In this document: positions 18,561-22,300 of the stretch, piece after piece
Layout of the letters: every line of letters begins with the position of its first letter
Numbering within the stretch: the stretch's first letter is position 1
Assembly (NCBI RefSeq): GCF_947568905.1
Contig: NC_079166.1
Span: forward strand, 63,302,001-63,366,000
Source of the DNA: Ostrea edulis
Taxonomy: Eukaryota
Direction of reading: 5' to 3'
DNA: 64,000 nucleotides
The notes under the pieces: generated by a model
Database searches by the model: none
What the model saw: the letters and a program-made list of their open reading frames with translations, nothing else
What the model was told of the DNA's origin: nothing
Translations under genes and position numbers: made by a program

Positions 18561-20294
18561 ACAATTTTTAACCATTTGACAGAAATTTGCCCAAGTTACG
18601 TCTCCATAAACGTGACCCGCAGCATACGAAAGCTGTAGATACAAAATGTTAGATCAGAGGGGACAAGTGGTGTGAGGATATGTTTTAATTAATATTCTCT
18701 ACAAACCATCCCCCCCCTAATTCGAAAGAGAGTATTAGATAGGTGTCCCTATAGATATACCTAACACAGTACATGTTCTCTTCTAGACATTGTGAAGACG
18801 TCCTAACTTAATAGGTTTCATTGTGTAAAGAACGTCTCGGGTATGTGTATATCTGTTACATACATGTAACACTTCCTGTCTGCTTCAACGCCCAAGACCT
18901 CGATCAGCGCATGCTCTACCCGTGAAACTGCTAAGACAACATTAGATTAGCCAAACAAACACCGCTTGGTAATCAATAAAAATAAAGCATCAATCTAATT
19001 AAAATAAAATATTAATTGGATCCAATTTTCAAATTTTAATTACATTTTTGGGGCTTTGAACATCTGAGAGAGGGGAAAAAAACGCAATGCATATTTTGAA
19101 GGAGGTAATATAATACCAAAAAGTAGATAACAAGTAAAACACAGTTTTGGGGTAAACGCCACCCCTGTCGTATATGTGTGGCCTTACTCTACAACGTATA
19201 TTAAATTTTGATTTAACATGCAATTAGAGAGTAGTTTTGATGATACTGACATTCATATGTACCGTAATAAAAGGAATTAGTAAGTTGTAAGCGAGGAAAT
19301 CAGCACTTGACGATGAAATTAAAAACAAACACCCTAGTTTAATTACTGGTAAAATTTGTTGGGTATAGGTAATTGTAAACTGATAAGCAGATTGCATGCC
19401 CTGGAGTAGAGACATTACCTATTCGACGCGTTCAACATATTCACACTGGGTCTTCTCCCCCGTGTGTTGTTTTAAGAACACGTGCAGCAGGTACCCAGCA
19501 GGTGTACATATAAACGATGTTCGATTGAAATGAGAAAACAAAAATCTTTCTTTTAGCATAATATAAAATATACATTTTTTTTTATTCTTAAAACATACAA
19601 AATAATATTTTGTTATTAATAAATTTTTGAACCAATTCTCGAAGTCTACACAAACACCATTAAAACAGACAGAACATATTAATCTTGCACTCGTATACGG
19701 TCATTTGTAGATCTATTTGTATTATTTTTTCACTGTAAAAGATATTAGGACACAGCTCCTAATCCTTATCATTAAATGTAGCATAAAAATACTATTAAAA
19801 ACAAAATTAAATGCTGGGTTTTTTGTTTTGTTTTTGGTTTTTTGTTTTGGTTTTTTTAGAATAAAAAAATTGGAGGTGTATTAAATATGCTAAATCCTAA
19901 GTATATCTGGTTTTAGTAGGTCCCTGATTTTATTTTTCATTTTTTAAAACAAATGATTTATTTAATATACCGGTATGTAATGCGAGATAGCTGTCCATAA
20001 CCAAGCCGTACTCATTTTCTGCCGACGAATGAAATAGCTATCGTACAGTTAGTTTGTCCTAACAGGTAAATAACGGTACTTCAAGCCGCGGCGGTATAAA
20101 TCTGCCCCGCGATGAAATCTCGCGGAGGGATAGCGCGGGAAGGATTAACATACAGGGGGGGGGGGGGGGGTGCGGTCTAATTACGGGATCCGCGATGGCT
20201 CTACTGTATCTATCTATCTATCTACATATATATATACAGAAATAGCAAATAACTCTTAAATGAACATAACTGTCCTAAGTGAAGAAATATTTGA

Positions 20295-21821
20295 TATAAA
20301 GCACAGAACAATTCACTTTATTTGGATACCCACTCCCGCCCCTACCCGGGGTTGAACTCACGACCTGCGGAACCAAATCTCCTAGCAGCGCGTAACCAAC
20401 GCGCAAGACCGCTCGACCATCTAGGCAAGTCATCGAAAGCAAGTTTCCTGACTTGCCTAGATGGTTGAGCGGTCTAGTGCGTTGGTTACGCGCTGCTAGG
20501 GGATTTGGTTCCACAGGTCGTGAGTTCAACCCCGGGTAGGGGCGGGAGTGGGGGTACCTGTAAAGTGCGAAACGAAATCGAAACGAAACGAAATGAAATC
20601 TACCGAAACGAAACGAAACGTACCGAAACGAAACCTACCGAAACGAAACGAAACAGATTGTATAACCGAACTCTTTTAATTATAATAATTAAAAATGGTA
20701 TCTTAGGCCCCTGTGAAAGTTACCACATATAAATAAAATTCGCCTCCCCTTTGATGTAGGCTTTCGGCTTGACTGTTACAAAGTTTTAAAAGCTGGAAAG
20801 GGGGGAGTAAGCACAAAGTACATATCCGTAGTTGATTAAATGCCATGCACAATTAGTTTCGGATCCATAAATTTCAGAACCGAAGGTTACAGTCTCAGAG
20901 ATCTGGGGAAACACACTATACGAGGGGTGGGGTCGCCGACGTTGGATCCGCCTTTGGGCATAGATACATTGTTTGAAGAAGCTGGTGTCTGAGAAAATTG
21001 AAAGCAGGAAGAGCTCTTAACCTCTTATTTTATCTCTAACTGCTGAGGTGCGAGTACTTTCAATAATGGAAAAACTCTATACATTTTGGGTGTTGCTAAG
21101 ACGGGGAATTGAAAACGGGACGGAAAACGGAATTTTTTTAATGCAATAATATTAGGAGGAGGTCGGCATTTTGTAAACTGAAAAGGCTTATGAACAAGGG
21201 AATTTTAAGCAGAAATCACAAAGAGAACGGGAGGACATATTCAGAATCCACCGTTTGATATACTACATACAAATACACAATATCCACATGTATACATATA
21301 TTTGTCTTTAGAGCAAAAAATACTGAAACATGTATTCATGCCCAAAAGCGGATCCAACGCCGACGACCCCATCCCTCGTTTAGTGTGTTTCCCCAGACTT
21401 CTGACCTGTGAGACTGTAACCTTCCGTTCTGAAATTTATGGATCCGAAGCTAATTGCACATGGTATCTATGTACTTTGTGCTTACCCCCCCCTTCCAACT
21501 TTTAAAACTTTGTATCAGTCAAGTCGAAAGCCAACATCAAAGGGGAGGCGAATTTTATTTATATGTGTAAACTTTAACAGGGGCCTAAGATACCATTTTT
21601 AATTATTACAATTAAAAGAGTTCGATTATACAATGTTTCGTTTCGTTTCGGTAGGTTTCGTTTCGTTTCGGTGGGTTTCGTTTCGTTTCGGTGGGTTTCG
21701 TTTCGGCAGATTTCGTTTCGTTTCGGTAGATTTCGTTTCGTTTCGTTTCGATTTCGTTTCGCACTTTACAGGTACCCCGGGAGTGGGTATCCAAATAAAG
21801 TGAAATTTTCTGTGCTTTATA
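20295..21821. mobile_element. Inverted (head-to-head) dimer of a tRNA-derived SINE-like unit with 138-bp arms and a 16-bp spacer; the right arm is split by an insertion
   Basis: Left arm 20295-20432. Right arm 20449-20551 plus 21787-21821. 7 mismatches in 138 bp by manual comparison. A-box TGGT(C/T)GAGCGG, B-box-like GAGTTCAACCCC, and an AATAAA/T-rich end. Confidence 0.85.
20552..21777. mobile_element. Foldback/Mutator-like non-autonomous element with about 420-bp TIRs containing (GAAAC)n and a 9-bp TSD
   Basis: gggtacctg ... caggtaccc ends. TSD cgggagtgg at 20543-20551 and 21778-21786. Arms 20552-20970 and 21327-21777 are reverse complements. Confidence 0.9.
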
Positions 21822-21857
21822 ATATATATATATATGTGTGTGAATGAATGAATGAAT

Positions 21858-22300
21858 GATACAATACCTTTAGTGACATAGTGCTCAAGGTACACAGAGA
21901 TTCCTAGAAATATCCTGACAATATTTACTGTAATCATACCCACCGTCCACTCTAACCCGACTGTCACCTTGATCGGGTACTCAGGGATTTTTAAGAACAC
22001 AACTAATCGATAACACTATTTTAGCAATGTTTGTACAGTGTATGAACGGAACATTTCAGAAAAGTTCGGTCATTACCGAGGGTGTCATTACTCTTCACAA
22101 ATATGGTAGTATGACATGTAAATACATGTAGAATAAAATACCTTTGCTGACATAGTGCTCGAGGTACACAGAGGTTACTAGAAATGTCCTGGCTATATTT
22201 GCTGTAATTATGGCTATTGTCCACTCTAACCTCGAGGATTTTTGAAAACACACAACTAATCGCTAATACAGGTAACACCGTTTTAGCAATGTTTGTATGA
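21858..22300. repeat. Diverged tandem duplication (copies at about 21858-22040 and 22133-22300)
   Basis: aataccttt..tgacatagtgctc.aggtacacagag..ctagaaat..cctg occurs twice, about 275 bp apart. Confidence 0.8.

What the first reader, a model, noticed from the sequence alone, without database searches (positions are those of the whole stretch)
20295..21821. Head-to-head inverted dimer of a tRNA-derived unit forming a 138-bp hairpin element
Seen: two about 95% identical tRNA(Leu/Ser)-like units face away from each other across a 16-bp spacer. Each has A and B boxes, a GCGCGT-TGGTT-ACGCGC stem where the anticodon arm would be, and an AATAAA/T-rich end. The dimer is bounded by TA. No monomer of this unit was noticed elsewhere in the window. 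Inferred: either a SINE dimer that now moves as a MITE, or a bidirectional Pol III unit/cruciform. Read-through would give long dsRNA. I know of no described bivalve family with this layout.
Basis: partly seen in the sequence, partly recalled or inferred. Interest (0 to 1): 0.7.

Follow-up and report, generated by a model that had tools for sequence, protein, structure and literature searches.

The report
Inverted SINE pair split by transposon
Two copies of a common oyster jumping element (over 1,000 copies in this genome) sit head to head, with a third, unrelated mobile element inserted into one of them; this particular pair is a one-off rather than a new mobile family, but the element forms such inverted pairs repeatedly and in a regular way.

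Summary
Two tRNA-like units lie head to head at 20236-20432 (minus) and 20449-20551 plus 21778-21829 (plus). They are 94.9% identical once a nested 1226-bp element is removed.

- The unit is an abundant SINE-like retroposon. Its head 22-mer occurs 1070 times, and most copies sampled have no inverted partner.
- The 'TA' boundaries are its (TA)n tails.
- The left arm runs 59 bp beyond the stated start.
- The 16-bp 'spacer' is the end of an upstream module of the same repeat.
- This junction is unique in the genome. Seven pairs with two complete 5' ends all have different fillers, so this is not a MITE family.

Inverted pairing is nonetheless recurrent. About one in seven of the sampled heads has an inverted partner arm of 50 nt or more. 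Fourteen of 15 pairs join one short and one long 3' form (p = 0.0005), and the arms share rare variants. I infer that both arms arise in one retroposition event (twin or dual priming). Palindromic SINE structures are already reported in bivalves. No read data were obtained, so nothing tested function.

The parts
20207..20235 (.). (TATC)n then (TA)n microsatellite. This is the 3' tail side of the left arm. It adjoins the end of an unrelated dispersed repeat that stops at about 20209-20215.
   Evidence: Read directly. The upstream repeat has at least 40 copies at 88-92% identity, ending at query position about 339-346.
20236..20432 (-). Left arm, the long form of the SINE-like unit: head H plus most of module M, reference positions 1-197. 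Its 5' end (position 1, TGAC...) is at 20432.
   Evidence: blastn against a 346-bp H-M-T reference cut from genomic copies: 94.9% over 197 nt.
20433..20448 (+). The so-called spacer. Together with 20429-20432 it matches the last roughly 20 nt of module T, which precedes H in tandem copies. It is therefore a 5' extension of the right arm, joined to the left arm through a 4-nt overlap (GTCA).
   Evidence: One search compared with the T-module end printed. This filler occurs at no other locus.
20449..20551 (+). Right arm, first part (reference positions 1 to about 103). It carries the box A-like and box B-like motifs.
   Evidence: blastn 92.3% over 104 nt.
20543..20551 (+). Left copy of the 9-bp target-site duplication CGGGAGTGG made by the nested element.
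   Evidence: Junction printout. The same 9-10-bp duplication pattern is seen at nine other copies.
20552..21777 (+). Nested 1226-bp non-coding element. Its terminal inverted repeats are about 420 bp (20552-20974 and 21326-21777), begin GGGTACCTGTAAAGTG and are rich in GAAAC-type subrepeats.
   Evidence: At least 40 near full-length copies at 91-98% identity out of 2383 first-look candidates. The longest ORF lying wholly inside it is 67 aa.
21778..21786 (+). Right copy of the 9-bp target-site duplication.
21778..21829 (+). Right arm, second part (reference positions 95-146). This is the short form, ending CTGTGCTTTATA and running into its (TA)n tail at about 21818-21835.
   Evidence: blastn 94.2% over 52 nt.

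Best explanation
What it is. The region holds three nested mobile-element events and no dedicated hairpin element.

1. A SINE-like retroposon occurs more than 1,000 times in this genome. It has a degenerate tRNA-like head H of 139 bp, an optional 67-bp module M that repeats the last 16 nt of H, and a (TA)n tail.
2. Here two copies lie head to head with their tails pointing outward.
3. Later, a non-autonomous long-TIR DNA transposon (9-bp target duplication, Mutator- or Foldback-like) landed in the right arm.

How the pair arose (inferred). Both arms were made in one retroposition event.
- Two reverse transcriptions were primed from the two strands of one target. One started at the terminal 3' motif, giving the long arm. 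The other started at the identical internal motif at the end of H, giving the short arm. This is twin priming or dual priming.
- The two cDNAs ran towards each other and were joined by microhomology or a template jump. Here the join is a 4-nt overlap.
- The same process recurs across the family, giving a different junction each time.

Shown: the anatomy, the copy numbers, the unique junctions, the pairing of long with short arms, and the rare variants shared by the arms.

Inferred: the RNA intermediate and the priming model. No function is implied. Each arm keeps its Pol III-like boxes and would be transcribed away from the other.
For: Abundance. The head 22-mer has 1070 matches at up to 2 mismatches, and the reversed control has none. 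Single copies match the left arm at 94-97%.

Retroposon signature, from 60 head loci taken in positional order from the listing of exact 22-mer matches (the listing starts on contigs C1 and C2):
- about 20 begin at position 1-6;
- the others begin at scattered points upstream, as in 5' truncation;
- 41 of the 44 copies whose 3' end is not truncated stop at position about 139 or 206, usually followed by (TA)n.

Recurrence.
- Nine of the 60 heads have an inverted partner arm of at least 50 nt joined at their 5' side, and about 14 have some inverted piece.
- Seven loci have both complete 5' ends, with seven different fillers of 2-18 nt. Two of these fillers are built from pieces of the head.

Coupling of the arms.
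- 14 of 15 pairs combine one short and one long arm, although single copies are about 54% short and 46% long. Binomial p = 4.6e-4.
- The arms share rare variants. The window's arms share 34T, 42G, 43C and 98G, which occur in 4, 1, 6 and 2 of 60 heads. L047 and L098 share 111C. L068 shares 34T and 43C.

Other points.
- 14 of 15 pairs carry (TA)n on both outer sides.
- The nested element is independent, with 9-bp duplications at ten copies.
- Dual priming, with two RNAs primed at the two nicks, was postulated for L1 (PMC2837659).
- Palindromic SINE structures are reported in bivalves (PMC11481361).
Against: - No target-site duplication could be seen around single copies or around pairs, because the flanks are (TA)n. 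A single insertion event is therefore not shown directly.
- No LINE partner was identified.
- A single-RNA model needs strand displacement or a template jump, and a two-RNA model does not by itself predict the long-plus-short rule. Neither model fits every case.
- Some arms carry module T sequence upstream of position 1, including the window's right arm. At least some templates were therefore longer than a transcript starting at position 1.
- One pair (L064) is short plus short.
- L013 and L014 share one odd junction on different chromosomes. This hints that a finished dimer can be copied as a unit.
- The tRNA origin of the head is weak: Rfam and default ARAGORN are negative.
- The census rests on 60 sampled loci plus about 25 selected ones, not on the whole genome.
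Confidence: 0.6

Rival explanations
1. DNA-level inverted duplication. A resident single copy was duplicated in reverse by fold-back priming or replication template switching after a break near its 5' end. It would be an ordinary palindrome-forming mutation.
For: The arms share rare variants. The junctions carry microhomology or short fillers. A small natural inverted repeat (GCAAGT...ACTTGC) spans the T/H boundary and could seed a fold-back.
Against: A duplicate of one copy should have the same 3' form on both arms, yet 14 of 15 pairs are long plus short. Seven loci keep both arms complete to the same first base, which random breakpoints would not give. A fold-back at the natural small repeat would put its loop at the centre, and that is not what is seen in the window.
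Confidence: 0.2
2. The dimer is a mobile unit: a SINE-derived MITE moved by a DNA transposase, with the shared 16-nt outer ends as inverted termini and TA as the target.
For: The outer ends of the long and short arms are the same 16 nt in inverted orientation, and the flanks are TA-rich. L013 and L014 have the same unusual junction apart from a 13-bp indel, lie on different chromosomes and have unrelated flanks.
Against: Every other junction is different. The L013 and L014 junctions each occur once in the genome at up to 3 mismatches, and the window's junction is unique. The pairs carry the marker variants of different single-copy subfamilies, so they arose repeatedly. The TA flanks are explained by the (TA)n tails that single copies also have.
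Confidence: 0.07
3. The repeat is a Helenus-type tRNA-LTR miniature retrotransposon, and the pair is an element with one LTR inverted. Another first-stage note in this genome suggested this for a similar locus.
For: H-M-T-H head-to-tail copies and chains with a period of about 346 bp exist. H starts with TG. A TGG... stretch lies 3 nt after a CA in module T, and a purine-rich stretch precedes the next H. Bivalve Helenus families with tRNA-Thr-like LTRs are published (PMC10886601), and relaxed ARAGORN calls the head Thr-like.
Against: Of the 44 sampled copies whose 3' end is not truncated, 41 stop at position about 139 or 206, usually followed by (TA)n, and not at a common LTR end. The 5' ends are scattered as in 5' truncation. 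No 4-bp duplications were seen. Of four 12-13-nt words of H and T, three are absent from the published Helenus consensus file and the fourth occurs once, in a fungal LTR. Published oyster Helenus LTRs have a different tRNA-like part.
Confidence: 0.05
4. Two independent insertions happened to land head to head.
For: SINEs often insert into microsatellite tails of other elements. One tail-to-tail neighbour pair exists (L074).
Against: With about 1,000 copies in 895 Mb, a second copy within 20 bp of the first base is expected far less than once. There is no (TA)n between the heads. The arms share rare variants, and the long-plus-short rule holds.
Confidence: 0.03
5. The hairpin is kept for a function, such as a bidirectional Pol III unit, a cruciform or a source of double-stranded RNA.
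For: Both arms keep the box A-like and box B-like motifs, and the stem is very stable.
Against: The arms have drifted about 5% apart, as expected for neutral decay. One arm is broken by a 1.2-kb insertion. This junction is unique and other pairs differ freely at the centre. No expression data were obtained.
Confidence: 0.03

Closest known systems
Palindromic and tandem-like SINE structures in bivalves (Martelossi et al. 2024, Mob DNA 15:22, PMC11481361)
   Same: tRNA-related SINEs of bivalves found as inverted ('palindromic') pairs. That paper counts 403 such structures in the blood clam Scapharca broughtonii, some of them in introns.
   Different: That survey covered SINEs with highly conserved domains in five species, found almost none in Crassostrea gigas and gave no mechanism. 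Here the family has a (TA)n tail and no recognised conserved domain. The pairs follow a long-plus-short rule and have arm-to-arm junctions that point to a single event.
Twin priming and the postulated 'dual priming' of L1 (Meyer et al. 2010, Mob DNA 1:7, PMC2837659; Ostertag and Kazazian 2001, recalled from memory)
   Same: An inverted segment joined to a direct segment, with 3' ends outward and microhomology or filler at the internal junction. Roughly a fifth of copies are affected (the L1 figure is from memory).
   Different: In classical twin priming the two parts cover different stretches of one RNA. Here both arms contain the same head, often complete to the first base. That fits dual priming, or twin priming with strand displacement on an RNA that carries the 3' motif twice. 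Flanking target duplications could not be checked.
Helenus tRNA-LTR miniature retrotransposons of oysters (Kojima 2024, PMC10886601)
   Same: A tRNA-like (Thr-like) Pol III module in a repeated unit, with head-to-tail chains, in the same host group.
   Different: The copies here end in (TA)n tails and are 5'-truncated. There are no 4-bp duplications, and the words tested do not match the oyster Helenus consensus sequences.
Mutator-like or Foldback-like non-autonomous DNA transposons (for the nested 1226-bp element)
   Same: A 9-bp target duplication, very long terminal inverted repeats built from short subrepeats, no coding capacity and high copy number.
   Different: No transposase relative was sought, so the superfamily is not assigned.

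Membership tests
tRNA-derived SINE | Head derived from a tRNA, with internal Pol III boxes A and B | tested here: inconclusive
   Box-like motifs can be read at about positions 11-25 and 73-84 of the head. ARAGORN at default settings finds nothing. The Rfam tRNA model gives no hit even on one arm alone at E up to 10. ARAGORN at 80-85% of its threshold finds a tRNA-Thr(GGT)-like cloverleaf with a long variable arm at positions 6-95.
tRNA-derived SINE | Short, non-coding, dispersed and in high copy number, with a defined 5' end | tested here: met
   The head 22-mer has 1070 matches on all large contigs. About 20 of 60 sampled copies start at position 1-6.
tRNA-derived SINE | 3' end with a simple-repeat or A-rich tail | tested here: met
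   Of the 44 sampled copies whose 3' end is not truncated, 41 stop at position about 139 or 206, usually followed by (TA)n. This also holds where the 5' flank is unique sequence.
tRNA-derived SINE | Flanking target-site duplications | tested here: inconclusive
   None was recognisable at copies with unique flanks, and the (TA)n flanks hide any others.
tRNA-derived SINE | 3' region shared with a partner LINE | not tested
   No LINE was sought.
MITE (dimer moving as a unit) | Many copies with the same internal structure and the same spacer | tested here: not met
   Seven pairs with complete ends have seven different fillers. All other junctions differ. The L013 and L014 junctions are each unique. 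Only L013 and L014 look related to each other.
MITE (dimer moving as a unit) | Terminal inverted repeats flanked by a fixed target duplication such as TA | tested here: inconclusive
   The outer 16 nt are inverted copies of each other, but the TA-rich flanks are the element's own (TA)n tails.
Helenus / TRIM | Two LTRs with fixed TG...CA ends enclosing a primer-binding site and a polypurine tract | tested here: not met
   Copy ends fall at positions about 139 and 206 with tails, not at a common LTR end. The 5' ends are scattered. A TGG stretch after a CA in module T is the only hint.
Helenus / TRIM | 4-bp target duplications in animals | tested here: not met
   None was seen at 21 copies with clean ends.
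Helenus / TRIM | Sequence relation to the published oyster families | tested here: not met
   Of four 12-13-nt words of H and T, three are absent from the supplementary consensus file. The fourth occurs once, in a fungal LTR. This is a weak test, because it uses exact words only.
Twin- or dual-priming product | Inverted plus direct segments of one element family with their 3' ends outward | tested here: met
Twin- or dual-priming product | Microhomology or short filler at the internal junction | tested here: met
   A 4-nt overlap in the window. Fillers of 2-18 nt elsewhere, two of them built from head fragments.
Twin- or dual-priming product | One target-site duplication around the whole structure | not testable with these tools
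   Both flanks are (TA)n.
Mutator/Foldback-like DNA transposon (nested element) | 9-11-bp target duplication and long terminal inverted repeats | tested here: met
   9-10-bp duplications at ten copies. Inverted repeats of about 420 bp.
Mutator/Foldback-like DNA transposon (nested element) | An autonomous relative with a matching transposase | not tested
   No search was made.

The most novel reading that the evidence does not exclude
This SINE family systematically makes head-to-head dimers because its RNA carries the 16-nt 3' recognition motif twice and ends in a self-complementary (TA)n tail. Both nicked strands of a target can therefore prime reverse transcription on it, and the two cDNAs are joined by an end-to-end template jump. 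That would be natural, repeated evidence for the 'dual priming' mechanism, which so far has only been postulated for L1. It would also explain mechanistically why some bivalve SINEs pile up as palindromes.
Probability: 0.3. Interest if true: 0.5.

Novelty: new member of a known kind. Interest (0 to 1): 0.3.

Why it matters
For this locus, little. It is a decayed, interrupted pair of retroposon copies with no sign of function.

For the family, the regular pairing of a long and a short arm, the arms that are complete to the first base, and the shared rare variants give a set of about 100-150 likely natural events (extrapolated from the sample). These could be used to study how reverse transcription from both strands of a target creates palindromes. 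Palindromes of this kind are a source of hairpin RNA and of genome instability in bivalves.

Tried and rejected
- ARAGORN and two Rfam scans for a tRNA were negative. The Rfam MIR7723 hit (89.5 bits against a gathering score of 200) and the mir-503 hit only reflect the long hairpin.
The sample is therefore 60 loci, not 97.
No expression or polymorphism data were obtained.
- I looked for an empty site through paralogues of the flanks. The upstream flank is another repeat family. The one paralogue of the downstream flank starts only after the microsatellite, so it says nothing.
- I tested whether the nested element has a hotspot at this 9-mer of the SINE. No other such junction exists.
- A search of the literature for 13-15-nt words of the head found nothing relevant. 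No supplements are held for the 2024 SINE survey.
- One script call got no answer and was repeated.
- Repbase and Dfam could not be consulted, so I cannot say whether this SINE or the nested element already has a name.

Full report
**Anatomy of the region.**
- Reading 20000-22100 and the repeat scan show an inverted repeat at 20314-20432 and 20449-20567 with 16 nt between the arms.
- Around it lies a much larger inverted structure (20551-20969 against 21330-21778) and a 52-nt outer pair (20287-20338 against 21778-21829).
- The outer pair and the inner hairpin belong together. Between them sits a separate 1226-bp element (20552-21777) whose ends read GGGTACCTGTAAAGTG... and ...CACTTTACAGGTACCC. 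The 9-mer CGGGAGTGG is present on both sides of it.
- This element is a family of its own. The genome holds at least 40 near full-length copies at 91-98% identity out of 2383 first-look candidates. Nine other copies with both ends visible have their own 9-10-bp target duplications.
- The longest ORF lying wholly inside it is 67 aa, and its inverted repeats are about 420 bp. It is a non-autonomous DNA transposon of the Mutator or Foldback style, and it landed in the right arm after the pair existed.
With the insert removed, the arms are 94.9% identical over 138 nt.

**What the unit is.** A search of the window's own genome (895 Mb, 52 contigs) with 20295-20550 returned many hits covering only one arm at 94-97% identity. 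About eleven loci covered both arms, at 77-87%.

Reading these copies shows three modules. I cut them into a 346-bp reference from genomic copies:
- H: 139 bp, starts TGACTTGCCTAGATGG, ends TTTCTGTGCTTTATAT.
- M: 67 bp, ends with the same 16 nt.
- T: 140 bp, ends in a T-run just before the next H.

The window's left arm covers reference positions 1-197, that is window 20236-20432. It therefore reaches 59 bp beyond the finding's start. The right arm covers positions 1-104 and 95-146.

The head 22-mer occurs 1070 times at up to two mismatches, against zero for the reversed control.

I took the exact matches in positional order from the listing, which starts on contigs C1 and C2, and fetched 60 of them with 800-bp flanks. 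In this sample:
- About 20 copies begin at position 1-6.
- Most others have T or M sequence upstream, starting at scattered positions, as in 5' truncation.
- At the 3' end, 22 stop at about 139-146 (short form) and 19 at 206 (long form), usually followed by (TA)n. Three run on further and 16 are truncated earlier.
- The (TA)n tail is present even where the 5' flank is unique sequence. It therefore belongs to the element.

These are the marks of a SINE-like, LINE-dependent retroposon. I saw no target duplications, and the tRNA origin of the head is weak. ARAGORN at default and the Rfam tRNA model are negative. Only ARAGORN at 80-85% of its threshold gives a tRNA-Thr(GGT)-like cloverleaf.

**Is the dimer a family?** No.
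- A pattern requiring both complete 5' ends within 19 nt of each other found seven loci, with seven unrelated fillers of 2-18 nt. Two fillers are made of head fragments.
- The other pairs have one or both arms truncated at different points. Some have a piece of module T between the arms.
- The window's 16-nt 'spacer' is itself the last roughly 20 nt of T attached to the right arm. It overlaps the first four bases of the left arm (GTCA). It is a junction, not a designed loop.
- Flanks of different pairs are unrelated, except for L009 and L015, which lie in a 1.8-kb duplicated block.
- One case hints at copying as a unit. L013 and L014 lie on different chromosomes with unrelated flanks, and share the same odd junction apart from a 13-bp indel. 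Each junction occurs only once in the genome.

**Inverted pairing is nevertheless a property of the family.** In the 60-locus sample, nine heads have an inverted partner arm of at least 50 nt joined at their 5' side, and about fourteen have some inverted piece there. With about 1,000 copies in 895 Mb, chance neighbours are negligible, and there is no (TA)n between the heads.

Two regularities point to a coupled origin:
1. Of 15 pairs whose outer ends can be typed, 14 join one short and one long arm. Single copies are 54% short and 46% long. The binomial p is 4.6e-4.
2. The arms of a pair share rare variants. The window's arms share 34T, 42G, 43C and 98G, seen in 4, 1, 6 and 2 of 60 heads. L047 and L098 share 111C (4 of 60). 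L068 shares 34T and 43C.

The pairs therefore arise repeatedly, from different subfamilies, with both arms coming from the same template or source. In addition, 14 of 15 pairs have (TA)n on both outer sides, as expected if both ends are 3' tails.

**Mechanism (inferred).**
- The layout is tails outward and heads inward, often complete to the first base, with microhomology or a short filler at the join. This is what reverse transcription primed from both strands of one target would give.
- Twin priming is established for L1 (from memory: Ostertag and Kazazian 2001).
- Meyer et al. postulated 'dual priming', with a second RNA primed at the top-strand nick. They noted that it remained to be validated (PMC2837659).
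- Here the RNA offers two identical 16-nt 3' motifs and a self-complementary tail. Priming at the terminal motif would give the long arm, and priming at the internal motif would give the short arm. This would explain the long-plus-short rule.
- Joining could be by microhomology or by an end-to-end template jump. That is a property of non-LTR reverse transcriptases that I recall from the R2 literature and did not check here.

The model has gaps:
- A single-RNA version needs strand displacement.
- A two-RNA version does not by itself predict the rule.
- Some arms, including the window's right arm, carry T sequence upstream of position 1. At least some templates were therefore longer transcripts, perhaps from head-to-tail chains.
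- A DNA-level fold-back duplication remains a real rival. It does not explain the long-plus-short rule or the arms that are complete to the same base.

**Other readings considered.**
- *Helenus.* Earlier notes of this scan describe Helenus tRNA-LTR miniature retrotransposons in this genome, and one note reads a similar inverted structure that way. I tested this. The copies end in tails at two alternative points and are 5'-truncated. No 4-bp duplications appear. Of four 12-13-nt words of H and T, three are absent from the published consensus file and the fourth occurs once, in a fungal LTR. I do not file the repeat under Helenus. The H-M-T-H chains and a TGG stretch after a CA in module T keep a small doubt alive.
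- *Function.* A functional hairpin or bidirectional Pol III unit has no support. The arms have drifted apart, one is interrupted, and centres vary freely between pairs. The two heads would be transcribed away from each other, so only read-through from outside could give a hairpin RNA.
- *Read data.* Runs holding the region exist in at least ten studies.

**Comparison with the literature.** Martelossi et al. [quoted passage not shown] They give no mechanism (PMC11481361). The layout is therefore known in bivalves. What may be new is this (TA)n-tailed family in a flat oyster and the regularities of its pairs. The species name comes from an earlier scan note and was not verified here. I could not consult Repbase or Dfam.

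**Verdict.** The MITE and functional readings are not supported. The structure is one instance of recurrent inverted pairing in an abundant SINE-like family, later hit by a DNA transposon.

Noticed in passing
window 20552-21777, and L032-L042: An abundant non-autonomous element of about 1.2 kb. It has inverted repeats of about 420 bp built from GAAAC-type 5-mers with a subrepeat of about 20 bp, ends GGGTACC..., and 9-bp target duplications. Copies reach 98% identity, so it may have been active recently. Its first 16 nt resemble the SINE sequence just after the insertion point, but no other SINE copy carries it at this site.
   Followed up: partly
L013:1440-1840 and L014:1442-1832: Two inverted pairs on different chromosomes share the same unusual junction (a short arm plus 55 nt of module T, joined to a truncated long arm). 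They differ by a 13-bp indel and have unrelated flanks. This is the only hint that a finished dimer can be copied as a unit.
   Followed up: partly
L054, L071, L106, L030 (for example L071:753-1267): Head-to-tail chains H-M-T-H with a period of about 327-346 bp. Module T ends in a T-run directly before the next head, and a 6-bp inverted repeat (GCAAGT/ACTTGC) spans that boundary. The relation between these chains, the short and long single copies and the source genes is unresolved.
   Followed up: partly
L085-L088: Four long-form copies share the same 50-nt 5' flank and start at the same base. This SINE is therefore also carried inside, or fused to, another repeated unit.
   Followed up: no
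window 19870-20215: A different dispersed repeat (at least 40 copies at 88-92% identity) ends at about 20209-20215, right at the (TATC)n/(TA)n tract that borders the left arm. The pair may thus have landed in the microsatellite tail of an older retroposon.
   Followed up: no
window 21847-21957 and 22121-22231: A direct repeat of 111 nt at 81% identity, 274 bp apart, lies just downstream. The downstream flank has one paralogue, on contig C6, at 83%.
   Followed up: no
L047:1237-1708: The youngest pair seen (arms 99.3% identical) has two extra partial heads of 51 and 42 nt in opposite orientation at its centre. It looks as if the polymerase switched template several times.
   Followed up: no
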